A DNA stretch of 64,000 nt from Bigelowiella natans CCMP2755 (lineage: Eukaryota; Protista; Cercozoa): contig ADNK01000630.1 of NCBI GenBank assembly GCA_000320545.1, positions 1 through 64,000 of the forward strand, in the 5' to 3' direction. How positions within the stretch are numbered: the first letter of the stretch is position 1; every line of letters starts with the position of its first letter. The translations under genes were made by a program, and so were the position numbers. The notes beneath the pieces are model-generated. The model made no database searches. It worked only from the letters and a program-made list of their open reading frames with translations, and was not told the origin of the DNA. Positions 35,390 to 41,439 of this stretch are shown here, one piece after another.

Positions 35390-36220
35390 TCCAGATGCAT
35401 CAGTCTCGAAATTCTGACATTCTAGCATTGCATTTTGCAATGTGAACTACACATCTAGACATGCTAGCATGTGAAAAAGAAATTCTACCCATGCTAGCAT
35501 GGCATGCTACTACTAGCTAGCTAGATGTGTCAACAGCTGTGCTGTGCATCACTAGATCACTAGCGCTGAGCGCACTGCTAGCACACAGCCTCTTATCAAC
35601 GCTAGCATGATTATCATGTAACAATCTAGCAATCCACACAACAAACGCAACAACGTGTGCAGACTGTGCTAGCACGTTTACCAGCACACAGCACATCATC
35701 GTTGTCCGCATCAAATCTGCCATGCTAGCATGGGACAAATGTAAGCGCAACAGATCTAGATGGATCGACATGCGTCGCAGCGCTCTCTTCTAGCTAGCTA
35801 GTCTCTGCTGACTGTAGTGTCTTAGTGGACTCGCAATTTCTTGTGAACATGATCGGCTGCGCATGGATACTACTGCACTCCTCTAGTCTAGTAGTCTCAT
35901 CTAGACGAGATCAACAAGTCCATGGTTTCATCCCTTTTGCAACTTGCACGGTGTGTAGATAGCACAAGTCTAGATGTGCCTAATGTACATTTGTGTCCAT
36001 CAAAGCTAGGCTCGTGAGTACCTGCTAAATTGCAGGTGCTGTTGGTGTCGATGATGATGCTGGATGGAGAGCCTCTGATGATGCATGCGCGGGGCGTGTG
36101 GCGACTCGGACGGAGGGGGTTAGCCTTGCTGCTGCAGGTATCTAAGTGATGCTACTGTAGGTTAAACCTGGACATGTCTACCTTGCTAGCTAGATATGAT
36201 CGCTTGATCGCATGGATTTC
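35390..36220. other. CTAG-rich, otherwise TpA-poor intergenic island
   Basis: In 35401-36000, 22 of 40 TA dinucleotides lie in CTAG (counted by eye). Confidence 0.85.
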
Positions 36221-36278
36221 AGTTTTGTACGATGAAAAATCACTCCGTATCTGTCTCATTTTGACTACCTAAAGTGAA

Positions 36279-39200
36279 TTAAAAACTGCCGCGGCGGCCA
36301 AGGCCACTAAACCCACTCATCTTTAAAGTATCCTCTCTTTCTTTCAAATCTTTGGTCTCATATCCACCGATTTTACTAACGCTGGAAGCTTTCGAGTGCT
36401 TCACTTCATAAAATCCGTTCTTGCTAACACTAGATTTATTCGTTTTGCTACCACTCCCACCGTCTGCAACATCCTGGCCTAGTGTACGCCTGCATTTACT
36501 TCCACTTCCCATATCCTGATCATTACGTCTTAACCTACTTCCACTTCCCGTATCTTGATCATTGCGTCTTAACCTACTTCCACTTCCTCCATCCTGATTG
36601 AGATAAGTATTATCAACAGTGCATAAAAAATGACTAAATGTATTCATTGGAACCTGTAATTTTGTTTCAGTTCCAAGTTTTGGCTTGCCATACGGGTGTA
36701 TTTTTTGAATAGTATCATCAACCAAAGCCACTGCAGATCGAACCTACCGGACAACACTACTATTAGTTCGTTTCGTGAATGAAAGAAATACTGAAATGCT
36801 GAATGAACGAAATTTTGTTTTGTATTTTAGCTATTAATTTCTACGTACATAGAGATGCAACGGGAAATCCACAGCTGTATAACCTAATAATGTGGAAGTC
36901 AACGAAATATTCAGTGTATTTGCGTACTACTACAATTTTTCACACCGAATGGAGTTGACAACGAAGAATGAACCTGACCATAAATCATAGTATGAGCATG
37001 ACTGTAATATTCACGTTATTGTACAACACCAGCTGTTACCACTCTATCAGATGATATTTACCTCCAATATGCCTTCGACAATGATGCTCAAACCGACAAT
37101 TATAATGTAACCCAGAATAATAGATTCTACCGAATCTTCATCAATTCCATATCTCAAAAATTCGCTTATCCAGATGCTTGCTAATACCAACTGGATCAAG
37201 AATATTGGTTACAAACTCAAATACAATAATAGCAAAATTCACACCTCAATTTTTGAAATGATGGCCACTAAGTGTGTGTAAATATAGGGAACCTGAACAT
37301 TTTAGTTTGGATATTTACAAATTTACAAAATCTCCAATAATAAGGTAAATGTAACTCGCATTGGTAATTTACCGGAGTTTCGATAAGAGCAAACATATTT
37401 TCAATATTTGACTGCTGCGATGAAATAGATTTCTCAAGGCCCTAAAATAATTGGAAAATTCAACGAATATGCAGCTACGAATAGGCCCGCTTCTATTTTC
37501 CACCTGAATGCAAAGAGCTGTAGATTCTGGGTGTACAAAGCGATCCGCATGTCGTCTTTATAGAATAAGTTAGGTTCTTGTAAAAGTTGAAATCCTTCTT
37601 TCATAAACGAAAAATACCTCGCAAAGAGCCATAAATCGCTCCGAATCCATGAATATGCAAGATAATAACATCCTGCTACAGTTTTCAATTTTTTCCGCTC
37701 TTTTAGAGTGAGCAATCCCTTCAGAAATCAAGAAATATATATTCAAATCAAAATATCAAATTTGTTACAGTAAAAAGTATTTTACCTGATACGTGAGTAG
37801 CTTTAGATCACGCTCTCCCCTTATAGCCTGCGTGAACATTATGAAAGCAGCAATTTGCAAACGAATAGCCTGGAAACATGATACAAAAGTCAGTTGACTA
37901 GTATGGAGATAGAACTTTAAATCTAGAAATAAAGGCTTCAAATACCTTTTCTCTGAAATCGATTGAGGTTTCATCGGAAGCCGGAACATATGCTAATAGC
38001 ATCTAAATTGGAGATTACAATAGTTTGCGTTTAGTGGATAGATACGATTGAGAACTAATAGAACCTGGATAAAGTCCCTGATATTACTTGTCAGATTCTG
38101 AAAATTGGCCTATCGATATATAACTTCATCTTTAGTTCATACAATATTCTATGTGATCACGACTACCAACATCAAGATGAAGTAAACGGTGTGATTTACC
38201 CGAGTCTCCCACCAACGAGATAATGAAATGTGCAAAAGGAGTCCAAGAAAGGCTGCTGTTAGAAGTGTCAACACGACAATAGGGCCATCTACCACAAAAA
38301 AAGACGATAAGATTTCGTTTGATTCCTATCGTTAATTAGCTCTGACCTCCGATCGGCCTAGCACACATCGAGCAACCTTCTTGAGAACCACTAACTTCAC
38401 ACTTTGAAGTGCAGAGGCGGGAGGCATAAAGTGTGGAAAGAGCCAAAAGTATCTACATCACAAGATATCAGAGTTTACTTCGCTTTTAAATTTTAAAACA
38501 AATGAGCCACCAAGATTTGTCCCCATAGCTTACTGGATCTACAAGAACAAATACCGAGGGGGGTTACTTAGGTAAAATGTATTTATCATGATGCTTGTTA
38601 AGAAATGCCTTAACACAGTTCCATTGGCAGCTTTGAACCATCCATGTGAGAATAGATGCCGGGGAGCATACCTTACATCATATGCACACTAGGTGCCACT
38701 ACTAAAGCCAATAAAACAATGAATGTACCAATAGACATGGCCGTTATCAGAGACGACCTAAATTATGAATTAGACTATCGTGAAACTCAACACTTGTTAC
38801 TATTTGCTACGGACCTTATCAGGACCGGGCGATGCCCCTGATACCGGGTGCATCTTGTGTATATTGATATCCTACACAAAATGATTTTATCACTTTCACA
38901 TTTCACATGACAATATAATCAATCACCTTTCCAATGCGCATAAGTCGTAATAGACGAAGTAAACGAAAGGCATGGAAACGGGGATTGCCTGGTATACGTT
39001 GAACATGTCAGTGAACCCTTGATTTGCGTTTGCTACAATTTTATATATACTCATTGTGAAAGCAACAATGTCCCCTGCGATGCTGAAACAATCTAGATAC
39101 ACCATCGGCCTCTACCGTACGATGAGATTTTAATGGAGAACACACGTTCAACAGAGGTCCTTAGTGTACTACCAGAAATAGCCTCCAACGATAGATTGCA

Positions 39201-41135
39201 ACCCTTAGCATGAATTCAGCCTGTCGGCAAAATTCCAATGTTATCAATGCAATACTTCTAATTTGAGGAGGCCATAACCAAAAAGATGAAGAATATCACA
39301 AAATTTATAAGCTCCATGGTACCCCTAAAAAGATTTAAATGCTATGGTGTTATAGGTTGTTTCTCAAAATTGGTGCTAGATTAAAGTACCCATTTCTTTC
39401 GGTGAATATTTGAAAACATAGAAAGCCAATAGATGCTGCAACTAGGATAGCACTCATCTGAAGTATTAATATCTTACTTATAAATCTTAAAATCTATTCA
39501 GAATGAATTTCACTGTGTTCGGTAGCTTTCCATCAATCCATAGCACAAGTTTTTCCTCCAGTTTCAGATCGGCCAAATAATCCTGTTCGAAATTTCGAGA
39601 TTACGGGGTTTCTAGATGGTTTACATGTTAACTGGGGTAGGTTACCGCATTCCTACTTTTTCTTTGTATTTTATTGTGCCTTTCTTCTTCCTCTCGGTTG
39701 AAATTCTGATTATTATTTAATTTAATATGATTTTTTGGGTAAGTATTGACATGTACCTTCAGAAACTGTCTAGTTTCAAACGTAAGCCTTGGACCCGTAT
39801 AATATTGAAAACGTTTGCTGCTGGCACTTTGAGGACTCTCTTTCATTCTTCTAAATTAATCATTTGAAGAAATAAAGAAACAACCCTCATGAATGTGTTG
39901 CTCATGCACACAGTAATTGGGGGAAAACATTGACCTGCGTTTTTCTGAATTATAAGCTTCGCTTAATTTATATGAATTCTGAGAAGATAAAGATGTGCAG
40001 TAACTAATCGCTTCTCATGACAATTTTGTAGCAGTAAAGTCTCTGCTTACCCTATTTGACTTTTTTGAAAAAGTTGAAGTTTCATACTGCGGATGTTCCA
40101 CTAATATATATTAGAGAGATTCCTAAATTCATAGCTGCTGTATCAGTTTTTACAAAGTGAGTTCATACCTCTAGAATCTGGATCTTCTATCCTCTCATCA
40201 CGGTAATCGTATTGAGGATCAACGGAGACTGGAGGCGGACGCCTAAGGTCAACAGATTCTGTGTGATGCTCGGGTCTGATCCTCCTCAGTCTTTCCTTTC
40301 GTGCATTTGCTTGCATTCTAGAGGAGGACTTTCTGCGTCGCATAGGTTCTGACATAGACTGAAGGTAGACTTTGCTTGTCTCTGTATCCTGTGTAAATTG
40401 TATTGTTTAGTCACGTACTTGCTCTCTTAGTTAAGGTAAGAATCACCGATTTCAAGGCCCTCGTTATCCTGTGTGAGCCAGTTGCAGCAACGCAGGGTTT
40501 CCGTTTCCGCTCCCATCGATTGTTTTCGTAGTCCTGTAACTGTTAATTGAGAATGAGTTAAGTTACCCTCGTGACAATTCATTTCATTTCGGATTACTAG
40601 TATTCCTTCTTGATATCGATTTACGTTGGATAATTTTGATTCTTTATCCTTCATAATATACGCTATGGATGGATCAGACTCATCTTCGTGGAGGAGTCGT
40701 GCAGCTGAGGAGACTAGATTTTGGTTCTAAGCAGAAAATATTATGACAAATCCATTTCACAAAACAAGTGAAGCGTAGTATCACCTTAATTTTTGGGTTT
40801 GAGTCCAAACCACTGTGAGAACTAAATTGCTGTGATCTTGTTGCCATTGACGACATTGAAGACTGAGAATGTATCTTCCGATGCCCATAATTTGTTGGCT
40901 CAGTGGTCAAGTACAAAGAATCTTGAAATAAGTTACAGAAATTTATTGTCCATGAATAGATAATTACATTGTGCTTACCTTGAGGGTATGCGATCTTGGG
41001 TTTGAACTTTGGCATCGATGGTGGGTCATCGTCATTGCGGTTGGAAGGTGATATGTCCTCGGAGCTGCCCTGCACTTTTCTATTTGGATTTGAACGATGA
41101 TGTTTCGCCATATAGGCGTCGTGTACAGTGTGCAT
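36279..41135 (-). CDS. Voltage-sensor domain (S1-S4) fused to a bestrophin-family anion channel
   Basis: Phase-consistent exon chain. S1 MSAILVAASIGFLCFQIF; S2 ELINFVIFFIFLAEFMLRV; S3 PMVYLDCFSI; S4 (exon 38927-38988) HAFRLLRLLRLMRIGK. Bestrophin motifs follow: YWYAPRHLF...NGTVLR..LW, AFLGLLLHISLSRWWETR (exon 38200-38288), GLLTLKERKKL...AYSW, IETP|VPYIYTHLV, EGILE|VHSSLSTPF|GYTAVDFP. There is a long low-complexity N-terminus whose 5' exons are less certain. Confidence 0.85.
36490..36598 (-). repeat. 36-bp coding tandem repeat (GSGSRLRRNDQD) in the C-terminal tail of the VSD-bestrophin
   Basis: NQDGGSGSRLRRNDQDTGSGSRLRRNDQDMGSGSKCRR in ORF 36279..36731. Confidence 0.9.
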
Positions 41136-41439
41136 CGTGCCCAAATAGATACAAGTTTACTTCAACTAGATATTGGGGAAAACACAGAATTAGAAAGACA
41201 TTTATCAGAATAACACAGCGACCTTCTCTTTGTGGCCGTGCTCACACGAAATTATACCTTTTTATTGTTGTGGTACTCAAAGATTTGTTAAAGATAACGT
41301 AGGATCATACTAAATAAAGAGATCCTAATAACATGGCATCCTGTATCAACAATCAAACCAACAGAAATATTTAAATTTTTCTGTACGCACGCATTGTTAC
41401 TTGAGCACTTGCTTGGGAAGGAAACTAAGGCCTGCGGCA

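What the first reader, a model, noticed from the sequence alone, without database searches (positions are those of the whole stretch)
36849..39582. Voltage-sensor domain fused to a bestrophin: a candidate voltage-gated anion/bicarbonate channel architecture
Seen in sequence: short minus-strand exons join in consistent phase into one reading frame. It runs S1 (MSAILVAASIGFLCFQIF), S2 with FxxE..R (IFFIFLAEFMLRV), S3 with LD (PMVYLDCF), an S4 with Arg every third residue (FRLLRLLRLMRIGK), a ~25-aa linker, then a full bestrophin instead of an S5-P-S6 pore. The bestrophin includes LGLLLHISLSRWWETR, GLLTxxE, PVPYIYTHLV and PFG...DFP. The ORF track misses it because ORF 38923..39105 reads through an intron and puts S4 in the wrong frame. 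Established knowledge: VSDs are known on 6TM channels, Hv1, voltage-sensing phosphatases and SLC9C, and bestrophins are pentameric anion channels known in fusion with rhodopsins (bestrhodopsins). I am not aware of a described VSD-bestrophin. Inference: this is a pentameric channel ringed by five voltage sensors.
Basis: partly seen in the sequence, partly recalled or inferred. Interest (0 to 1): 0.93.

Follow-up and report, generated by a model that had tools for sequence, protein, structure and literature searches.

The report
Voltage-sensor–bestrophin fusion channel gene
In the alga Bigelowiella natans one expressed gene joins a complete voltage-sensor domain of the kind found in nerve-type ion channels to a bestrophin pore; I found no description of this architecture, and it may be a new kind of voltage-gated channel.

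Summary
The window (Bigelowiella natans, contig C3107) carries a minus-strand gene with one 5'UTR exon and 33 coding exons (ATG 41135, stop 36279-36281, introns 51-105 nt). A public RNA contig (L028) is 100% identical to the exons, splices every intron, and encodes a 911-aa protein (P0014) identical to my model.

- **Voltage sensor:** residues 342-436 match Pfam Ion_trans S1-S4 only (32.6 bits, cut-off 25).
- **Bestrophin:** residues 529-779 match Bestrophin_2 and Bestrophin (48 and 33.7 bits). No S5-P-S6 pore lies between the two domains.
- **Conservation:** the fusion recurs in a close relative (86% identity) and in Amorphochlora amoebiformis (41%, NCBI "hypothetical protein"). All voltage-sensing hallmarks are invariant: four Arg plus one Lys in S4, Phe/Glu in S2 and Asp in S3.
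- **Calcium site:** the bestrophin Ca2+-clasp acidic cluster is absent.
- **Why it was hidden:** the JGI gene model is mis-spliced, and hmmscan drops the Ion_trans hit on the full-length protein.
- **Novelty:** I found no paper on this architecture and no relative outside chlorarachniophytes.

Voltage gating, pentamer formation and ion selectivity are inferred, not shown. This scan has not reported this fusion on other DNA.

The parts
35889..41257 (-). Whole transcription unit of the voltage-sensor-bestrophin gene (public model Bigna1 86588, which is mis-spliced)
   Evidence: Transcript contigs L025/L026 span 41257..35755 and L028 spans 41167..35889. Poly(A) reads end at about 35935.
41223..41257 (-). 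5'UTR exon, spliced to 41167
   Evidence: L025/L026 aligned to the window.
36279..41135 (-). Coding region: 33 exons, 911 aa (920 aa when the longer exon 3 is used), stop codon at 36279-36281
   Evidence: The model is identical to P0014.
39514..41135 (-). Exons 1-10: hydrophilic N-terminal tail (residues 1-342), no signal peptide and no Pfam domain
   Evidence: The first hydrophobic segment is S1.
39390..39457 (-). Exon 11: helix S1
39173..39324 (-). Exons 12 (39279-39324) and 13 (39173-39220): helix S2 with outer Glu369 and the charge-transfer-centre residues Phe379 and Glu382, plus Arg386
39051..39111 (-). Exon 14: helix S3 with Asp403 and Asp410
38927..38988 (-). Exon 15: helix S4 with Arg425, Arg428, Arg431, Arg434 and Lys437, one at every third position
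   Evidence: (joint 38870>38926).
38815..38871 (-). Exon 16: poorly conserved 19-aa Pro/Gly-rich linker after S4
38511..38757 (-). Exons 17 (38729-38757), 18 (38609-38671, GC donor) and 19 (38511-38538): highly conserved N-terminal bestrophin segment (DNGHVYWYAPRHLFSHGW...) and the start of TM1. Their three introns are often retained.
36849..38452 (-). Exons 20-31: bestrophin core. It holds TM1-TM2 with the RWW motif (exon 38200-38288), GLLT, PVPYIYT, and PFGYTAVDFP in place of the Ca2+ clasp.
   Evidence: Pfam Bestrophin_2 48 bits and Bestrophin 33.7 bits on P0014. PDB profile hits to BEST1 and BEST2.
36279..36743 (-). Exons 32-33: C-terminal tail, beginning with two copies (a third is degenerate) of the repeat GSGSRLRRNDQD

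Best explanation
This is one nuclear gene of Bigelowiella natans. It encodes a 911-aa membrane protein made of a cytosolic tail, a canonical four-helix voltage-sensor domain (S1-S4), a 19-aa linker, a complete eukaryote-type bestrophin, and a C-terminal tail. Shown here: the gene structure, its expression as a fully spliced mRNA, both domain identities, and conservation of the fusion in three chlorarachniophytes. Inferred: the bestrophin part assembles as a pentamer like other bestrophins and forms the pore, with five sensors on its rim, as the rhodopsins sit in bestrhodopsins. Also inferred: S4 movement takes the place of Ca2+ binding as the input that opens the hydrophobic neck. S4 ends in the cytosol and is tethered to the conserved N-terminal bestrophin segment. 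In BEST1 that segment helps form the Ca2+ clasp, whose acidic cluster is missing here. The most likely function is a voltage-regulated anion (Cl-/HCO3-) conductance of a non-plastid membrane. Selectivity and the polarity of gating cannot be read from the sequence.
For: Transcript level:
- RNA contigs from three studies carry GT..AG joints that link the S4 exon to the downstream exons.
- Contig L028 (run DRR659772) splices all 32 coding introns and matches the exons 100%. Its ORF P0014 equals the window model.
- MMETSP contigs L025/L026 also carry both domains on one transcript.

Voltage sensor:
- Pfam Ion_trans scores 32.6 bits, E 6e-8, on P0014:330-460. It covers profile positions 6-109 of 241.
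- The Amorphochlora orthologue scores 46 bits.
- hhalign against the genome's own channel sensors gives probability 97.2%, E 2.8e-11.
- Residues 3-112 of the model built from the Amorphochlora orthologue (P0003) superpose on Nax, Cav and NavAb sensors at Z 11-12 and about 3 A rmsd.
- Glu369, Phe379, Glu382, Asp403, Asp410, four S4 Arg and one Lys are invariant between sensors that are only 41% identical.

Bestrophin:
- Bestrophin_2 scores 48 bits and Bestrophin 33.7 bits.
- A family profile hits BEST1 at E 1e-13, chicken BEST1 at 9e-11 and bestrhodopsin 7PL9 at 3e-9, over nearly the whole domain.

Selection on the fused frame:
- Exon 18, which bridges the two domains, has about five nucleotide differences from the close relative but 20 of 20 identical residues.
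- The fusion persists at 41% identity in Amorphochlora.

Topology (established knowledge): S4 ends in the cytosol and the bestrophin N-terminus is cytosolic.
Against: - There are no functional data of any kind.
- The linker after S4 is poorly conserved and rich in Pro and Gly, so rigid mechanical coupling through it is doubtful.
- The neck lacks the two phenylalanines of BEST1 (and a manual register read).
- By established knowledge a bacterial bestrophin (KpBest) conducts cations, so anion selectivity is not assured.
- Many transcripts retain introns 17-19 or the introns that flank the S3 exon. These encode only a 485-aa tail-plus-sensor protein.
- The structure model is poor outside the sensor (mean pLDDT 52).
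- Pentamer formation was not tested.
Confidence: 0.6

Rival explanations
1. The fusion protein is real, but the S1-S4 module does not gate the pore. It would serve as a membrane anchor, an assembly or targeting module, or a lipid-sensitive regulator, and the bestrophin would be constitutively open or controlled by something else, such as the long tails.
For: The S4-to-bestrophin linker is variable and flexible. Long charged tails with a repeated RLRRNDQD motif could carry regulation. By established knowledge, some voltage-sensor-like domains have lost sensing, for example in certain TRP and TPC repeats.
Against: Every residue needed for voltage sensing is invariant between sensors only 41% identical: five S4 charges, the S2 Phe and Glu, and the S3 Asp. 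A mere anchor would not need that.
Confidence: 0.22
2. Alternative splicing makes the sensor and the bestrophin work mainly as separate products. Intron-retaining mRNAs would yield a 485-aa tail-plus-sensor protein, and the full fusion would be a minor form.
For: MMETSP contigs L025/L026 retain introns 17-19 and end the first ORF after exon 17 (P0004). Contig X1 retains both introns that flank the S3 exon. Extra depth in the intronic bins of X2 and X3 suggests sizeable retention. The relative's contig L024 starts inside the retained intron before S3.
Against: A fully spliced contig exists. In X2 and X3 the one unspliced piece that can be measured, across intron 19, has roughly a tenth to a sixth of the depth of the spliced contigs. 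The bridging exons are conserved at protein level in three species. A downstream ORF on a retained-intron mRNA would not normally be translated in a eukaryote.
Confidence: 0.12
3. The fusion is an artefact: two neighbouring genes joined by a gene-model or assembly error.
For: The region has very short exons, and the public gene model is wrong in the middle.
Against: Canonical splice joints connect the two parts in RNA from several independent studies. The frame is continuous. Single-ORF orthologues exist in two other organisms.
Confidence: 0.01

Closest known systems
Bestrhodopsins (rhodopsin-bestrophin fusions of marine algae; cryo-EM entry 7PL9, Rozenberg et al. 2022, cited in PMC11453091)
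   Same: A transmembrane sensor module is fused to the cytosolic N-terminus of a bestrophin. The Ca2+-clasp acidic cluster is not conserved in either. 7PL9 is the only solved chain that the single sequence P0001 finds, and it is hit by the family profile at E 3e-9. Both occur in marine unicellular algae.
   Different: The sensor here is a four-helix S1-S4 voltage sensor, not one or two seven-helix rhodopsins. The input would be membrane potential, not light. The lineage is different (chlorarachniophytes, Rhizaria).
Animal bestrophins BEST1-4 (Ca2+-activated pentameric anion channels; e.g. 4RDQ, 9KC9)
   Same: The profile match covers TM1 through the cytosolic domain (BEST1 residues about 25-334). 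Shared features are the RWW motif after TM2, the Gly83 equivalent, a hydrophobic neck and the PFG motif.
   Different: An N-terminal voltage sensor and a 342-aa tail are added. The acidic cluster EDDDD is replaced by Y-T-A-V-D (Y-D-A-V-N in Amorphochlora). The neck is aliphatic rather than Phe-rich. Sequence identity is low: Pfam Bestrophin scores only 33.7 bits.
Voltage-gated cation channels of the Ion_trans superfamily (Kv, Nav, Cav, NavAb)
   Same: The S1-S4 module has the same charge pattern and the same charge-transfer centre. Support comes from Pfam Ion_trans, hhalign and structural superposition.
   Different: There is no S5-P-S6 pore domain. The pore partner is a non-homologous bestrophin, expected to be pentameric rather than tetrameric.
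Voltage sensors coupled to non-pore effectors: voltage-sensing phosphatase (Ci-VSP), Hv1, SLC9C1
   Same: A stand-alone S1-S4 module is coupled to something other than a P-loop pore. The Ci-VSP sensor is among the structural matches (4G80: TM-score by target 0.61, rmsd 4.3 A).
   Different: The effector here is an ion channel of another superfamily. S1 has no Asp of the Hv1 selectivity-filter type, so an Hv1-like proton path is unlikely (read from the sequence).

Membership tests
Voltage-sensor domain (S1-S4 of Pfam PF00520 Ion_trans) | Profile match to the S1-S4 part, above the curated cut-off | tested here: met
   P0014:330-460 scores 32.6 bits (cut-off 25) on profile positions 6-109 of 241. 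P0006:290-420 scores 46 bits. hhalign against the genome's own channel sensors gives probability 97.2%.
Voltage-sensor domain (S1-S4 of Pfam PF00520 Ion_trans) | S4 with basic residues at every third position (at least three) | tested here: met
   Arg425, Arg428, Arg431, Arg434 and Lys437 are invariant in the Amorphochlora orthologue.
Voltage-sensor domain (S1-S4 of Pfam PF00520 Ion_trans) | Charge-transfer centre: an aromatic and an acidic residue in S2, and an acidic residue in S3 | tested here: met
   Phe379 and Glu382 in S2 and Asp403 in S3 align with the F..E and D of the genome's own channels and are invariant.
Voltage-sensor domain (S1-S4 of Pfam PF00520 Ion_trans) | Four-helix bundle fold | tested here: met
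   Residues 3-112 of the model (pLDDT 64-79) superpose on sensors of Nax, Cav1.2, Cav3.3 and NavAb at Z 11-12 and about 3 A over about 110 residues. Caveat: Z below 13 is not unusual for helical bundles.
Voltage-sensor domain (S1-S4 of Pfam PF00520 Ion_trans) | Voltage-driven charge movement | not testable with these tools
   This needs gating-current or voltage-clamp fluorometry measurements.
Six-transmembrane voltage-gated cation channel | S5-P-loop-S6 pore domain after S4 | tested here: not met
   The Ion_trans match stops at profile position 109-113. What follows is a linker and then a bestrophin.
Bestrophin (Pfam PF01062 / PF25539) | Profile match above the curated cut-offs across the TM and cytosolic core | tested here: met
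   On P0014, PF25539 scores 48 bits (cut-off 27) and PF01062 scores 33.7 bits (cut-off 24.2). A family profile hits BEST1, BEST2 and chicken BEST1 in the PDB at E 1e-13 to 1e-9 (that profile includes one ordinary bestrophin, P0005).
Bestrophin (Pfam PF01062 / PF25539) | RWW motif after TM2 and a hydrophobic neck | tested here: met
   Arg556-Trp557-Trp558. Gly547 is the Gly83 equivalent and Leu548 the Phe84 equivalent. Positions 76 and 80 are Leu and Ala/Phe depending on register.
Bestrophin (Pfam PF01062 / PF25539) | Ca2+ clasp (acidic cluster E300-D304 of BEST1) | tested here: not met
   PFGEDDDDF aligns with PFGYTAVDF (B. natans) and PFGYDAVNF (Amorphochlora). This feature defines the Ca2+-activated animal subgroup, not the whole family.
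Bestrophin (Pfam PF01062 / PF25539) | Homopentameric assembly around a central pore; anion conduction | not tested
   No multimer prediction or experiment was run. These are inferred from the family.
Bestrhodopsin | Microbial rhodopsin domain(s) N-terminal to the bestrophin | tested here: not met
   Pfam finds no rhodopsin family on P0014 or P0006. The only N-terminal TM module is S1-S4.
Hv1-type proton channel | Sensor-only protein with an S1 Asp selectivity filter and an RxWRxxR S4 | tested here: not met
   S1 (MSAILVAASIGFLCFQIF) has no acidic residue. S4 is RLLRLLRLMR. The protein continues into a bestrophin.

The most novel reading that the evidence does not exclude
This is a new structural class of voltage-gated channel: a pentameric bestrophin pore opened directly by five canonical S1-S4 voltage sensors, with S4 movement replacing Ca2+ binding at the clasp region. 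It would show that the voltage sensor can drive a pore unrelated to P-loop channels and of different symmetry. It would also give chlorarachniophyte algae a fast voltage-gated anion conductance.
Probability: 0.5. Interest if true: 0.92.

Novelty: new variant of a known kind. Interest (0 to 1): 0.86.

Why it matters
Voltage sensors are known to drive tetrameric P-loop pores, a phosphatase and a Na+/H+ exchanger, and to conduct protons themselves. Bestrophins are known to be gated by Ca2+, by cell volume and, in bestrhodopsins, by light.

A natural, conserved and expressed fusion of the two makes a concrete question testable: can an S1-S4 sensor gate a five-fold, non-homologous anion pore, and how is the movement passed on?

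If it works, it is a compact genetically encoded voltage-gated anion conductance, and a new system for studying sensor-to-effector coupling. It also points to anion-based electrical signalling in a marine alga that carries many Cav/Nav-type channels.

There is a practical lesson as well. The architecture is invisible in public annotation. The JGI model skips the S3 exon and frameshifts S4. The Amorphochlora protein is labelled "hypothetical". Even on the correct full-length protein, hmmscan does not report Ion_trans.

Tried and rejected
- **Exon-by-exon searches, by reference:** Pfam on ten exons gave nothing relevant, and a PDB search with the GLLT exon gave nothing. Six-frame scans of the genome with PF01062 and PF00520 did not hit this locus, because the exons are only 9-43 codons long.
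- **The joined model:** it was never sent to a search tool. It was only built and translated inside scripts. Later work used public proteins by id, including P0014, which is identical to the model.
- **Rejected exon model:** a first two-exon model for 38453-38757 did not fit the depth bins. The three-exon model is confirmed by L024 and L028.
- **Structure prediction:** AlphaFold2 on the Amorphochlora orthologue with a nine-row alignment gave mean pLDDT 52. Only the sensor part was usable, and Foldseek E-values were weak. The bestrophin fold and the sensor-pore arrangement could not be modelled.
- **Search for relatives elsewhere:** two scans of JGI metagenome contigs, one of IMG/VR viral contigs and one of prokaryote genomes found nothing. 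Word-based searches of 5.8 billion proteins found only chlorarachniophyte sequences plus one ordinary bestrophin at E 5e-3. The ESM Atlas showed no cluster with both families. These methods are insensitive to distant fusions.
- **Paralogues:** none in the genome. The two other bestrophin loci (C514, C1536) look ordinary. At C514 the ORF list within about 2 kb upstream of the bestrophin exons showed an unrelated minus-strand gene and nothing resembling a sensor. C1536 upstream was not examined.
- **PPAP30:** this plastid-surface bestrophin-like protein of Amorphochlora (PMC10927497) was considered as an orthologue. It is not supported, because PPAP30 was chosen as a presequence-bearing protein and this family has no signal peptide. 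It could not be checked by sequence.
- **Hv1-like proton channel reading:** rejected (see the membership test).
Full report
**What is in the sequence**

**RNA evidence**

- Three runs are spliced transcriptome assemblies. They gave fifteen listed CT..AC joints, which are GT..AG on the minus strand.
- Two of those joints, 38870>38926 and 38754>38812, tie the S4 exon to the downstream exons. Sixteen further joints were not listed.
- One contig (X1, 3426 nt) runs from 35900 past 40387.
- Raw 3'-biased reads put the RNA on the minus strand, with a poly(A) site near 35935.

**Gene model**

I used the joints, the contig piece lengths and the depth bins, then orthologous and own-species cDNA contigs. 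The result is one 5'UTR exon (41223-41257) and 33 coding exons.
- The ATG is at 41135 and the stop at 36279-36281.
- Introns are 51-105 nt, median 62.
- All introns are GT-AG except intron 18, which has a GC donor.

A first two-exon solution between 38453 and 38757 did not fit the depth bins. I replaced it with three exons: 38729-38757, 38609-38671 and 38511-38538.

**How the spliced model was searched**

The joined model was not sent to any search tool. It was only assembled and translated inside scripts.

The exhaustive phmmer search with the 43-codon exon 37062-37190 found one protein, P0001. From it, word-based searches and cluster look-ups led to public proteins usable by id:
- **P0002** is JGI model Bigna1/86588, which names the organism as Bigelowiella natans.
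- **P0004** is an MMETSP transcript ORF.
- **P0014** is a 911-aa ORF on a contig of run DRR659772.
- **P0006** is NCBI GAB5373028.1, "hypothetical protein" of Amorphochlora amoebiformis.

P0014 is identical, residue for residue, to the window-derived model that uses the short form of exon 3. Its contig L028 matches the window exons at 100% and splices all 32 coding introns. The gene model is therefore settled by an independent public transcript.

**Domain identities**

*Voltage sensor*
- P0014:330-460 matches Pfam Ion_trans at 32.6 bits (cut-off 25, E 6e-8). The match covers profile positions 6-109 of 241 only, which is S1-S4.
- The Amorphochlora sensor scores 46 bits.
- A profile of the two sensors aligns with S1-S4 of eight of the genome's own intron-poor Cav/Nav-type channel repeats at hhalign probability 97.2%, E 2.8e-11.
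- The AlphaFold2 model is poor overall (mean pLDDT 52), but its sensor part has pLDDT 64-79. Residues 3-112 superpose on sensors of Nax, Cav1.2, Cav3.3 and NavAb at Z 11-12 and about 3 A rmsd. Ci-VSP is also among the Foldseek matches. I treat the structure as supportive only.

*Bestrophin*
- P0014 matches Bestrophin_2 at 48 bits and Bestrophin at 33.7 bits.
- A small family profile hits solved BEST1 (E 1e-13), chicken BEST1, BEST2 and the bestrhodopsin 7PL9 (E 3e-9) across BEST1 residues about 25-334. That profile includes one ordinary bestrophin, P0005.

Nothing resembling S5-P-S6 lies between the two domains.

**Functional residues (P0014 numbering)**

- S4 carries Arg425, Arg428, Arg431, Arg434 and Lys437, one at every third position.
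- S2 has Glu369 near its outer end, plus the charge-transfer-centre pair Phe379 and Glu382, followed by Arg386.
- S3 has Asp403 and Asp410.
- All of these are invariant between the B. natans and Amorphochlora sensors, which are only 41% identical.

In the bestrophin part, Arg556-Trp557-Trp558 and the Gly83 equivalent (Gly547) are kept. The neck is aliphatic: Leu548 sits at the Phe84 position, and the 76 and 80 equivalents are Leu and Ala/Phe depending on register.

The Ca2+-clasp cluster EDDDD of BEST1 aligns with Y-T-A-V-D, and with Y-D-A-V-N in Amorphochlora.

**The junction between the domains**

- After S4 comes a 19-residue stretch that is rich in Pro and Gly and poorly conserved.
- Then comes one of the longest near-invariant stretches of the whole alignment (K-V-V-x-DNGHV-x-WY-x-PRHLFS-x-GW).
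- This stretch aligns with the N-terminal segment of bestrophins. By established knowledge of the chicken BEST1 structure, that segment contributes a backbone carbonyl to the Ca2+ clasp.
- S4 ends in the cytosol and the bestrophin N-terminus is cytosolic, so the topology of the fusion is consistent.

**Conservation and distribution**

- The close relative (P0001; cDNA contig L024) is 86% identical from S3 to the C-terminus. It splices at the same junctions as exons 14-33.
- Exon 18, which bridges the two domains, differs at about five nucleotides but at no residue.
- Amorphochlora P0006 (797 aa) has the full architecture in one ORF.
- I found no paralogue in the genome.
- I found no relatives in metagenome, viral or prokaryote scans, and no Atlas cluster that combines both families.

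These searches are insensitive to distant relatives. "Restricted to chlorarachniophytes" is therefore only what has been seen so far.

**Why it was hidden**

- The JGI model (P0002) skips the S3 exon, reads the S4 exon out of frame, mis-splices the exons that follow and skips the RWW exon.
- MMETSP assemblies split the gene into two ORFs because introns 17-19 are retained.
- Even on the correct P0014, hmmscan reports only the bestrophin families. Ion_trans appears only when the N-terminal part is scanned alone.

**Splicing complexity**

- MMETSP contigs retain introns 17-19.
- Contig X1 retains both introns that flank the S3 exon, and it carries a base change at the acceptor G (38989).
- A low-depth unspliced piece covers intron 19 in X2 and X3.
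- The relative's contig begins inside the retained intron before S3.

Such mRNAs would encode only the tail plus the sensor (485 aa, P0004). Whether this is regulation or noise is open.

**Literature**

Full-text searches were blank for a described fusion. Terms combined bestrophin with voltage-sensing domain, voltage sensor domain, fusion, domain architecture, protist or Bigelowiella; I also searched "voltage-gated bestrophin" on its own.

The only chlorarachniophyte bestrophin discussed is PPAP30, a presequence-bearing plastid-surface protein of Amorphochlora (PMC10927497). This family has no signal peptide, because the first hydrophobic segment is S1, so a non-plastid membrane is more likely.

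**Verdict**

- The architecture is real, expressed and conserved. I put about 97% on that.
- That it is a voltage-regulated bestrophin-type channel is my best mechanistic reading, at about 55-60%.
- The main rival is a sensor module that no longer gates the pore.
- It is a new combination of two well-known modules, closest in logic to bestrhodopsins, and it has not been described in the literature I could search.

Noticed in passing
window 38200-39220 (public model Bigna1/86588 = P0002): The public JGI gene model skips the S3 exon (39051-39111) and reads the S4 exon and the next exon out of frame. It then reads on past the exon-17 donor, joins directly to exon 20 in the wrong frame, leaving out exons 18-19, and omits the RWW exon (38200-38288). 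As a result it loses the Ion_trans match and the first two bestrophin helices.
   Followed up: yes
P0014 (the protein of this window): hmmscan reports no Ion_trans hit on the full-length protein or on residues 300-911. It reports 28.6-32.6 bits when only residues 1-470 or 330-460 are scanned. A filter or bias correction seems to hide the sensor in the full-length context.
   Followed up: partly
window 38453-38728: The three short introns 17-19, around the 63-nt and 28-nt exons 18 and 19, are retained together in the MMETSP transcript contigs L025/L026. They are partly retained in SRA assemblies. The retained form ends the ORF after the sensor (P0004, 485 aa).
   Followed up: partly
window 38989 and 38926-39219: In run X1 the contig has T instead of C at 38989. 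On the minus strand this is the G of the AG acceptor before the S4 exon. The contig retains both introns that flank the S3 exon. This may be a strain allele that impairs splicing, or an assembly path through pre-mRNA.
   Followed up: no
window 40598-40625: Exon 3 has two 5' splice sites. Ending at 40625 gives the 911-aa form (L028 and the JGI model). Ending at 40598 adds nine residues and gives the 920-aa form (MMETSP contigs). One MMETSP strain has V133A (GTA to GCA), which destroys the upstream GT donor.
   Followed up: partly
window 38607-38608: Intron 18 has a GC donor (GC-AG intron). Its use is confirmed by the fully spliced contig L028.
   Followed up: yes
window 36490-36593: The C-terminal tail begins with tandem copies of a 13-residue repeat (GSGSRLRRNDQD plus one residue). 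There are two copies and a degenerate third in B. natans, and about four in the close relative P0001.
   Followed up: no
G000:C3319:173-247: A 25-codon fragment, 68% identical to the PFG/DFP exon region of this gene, lies at the start of another contig. It may be an assembly remnant or a decayed copy.
   Followed up: no
G000:C514:33959-35557 and G000:C1536:20852-23881: These are the only two loci in the genome that the Pfam Bestrophin profile hits directly. Both look like ordinary bestrophins with longer exons. At C514 the ORF list about 2 kb upstream showed an unrelated minus-strand gene and nothing resembling a voltage sensor. C1536 upstream was not examined.
   Followed up: partly
window 35755-35935: The 3' end is heterogeneous. 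Poly(A)-tailed reads end at about 35935, while transcript contigs run on to 35889 (L028) and 35755 (L025/L026).
   Followed up: no
If that holds, this alga has attached voltage sensors to several unrelated effectors.
   Followed up: no
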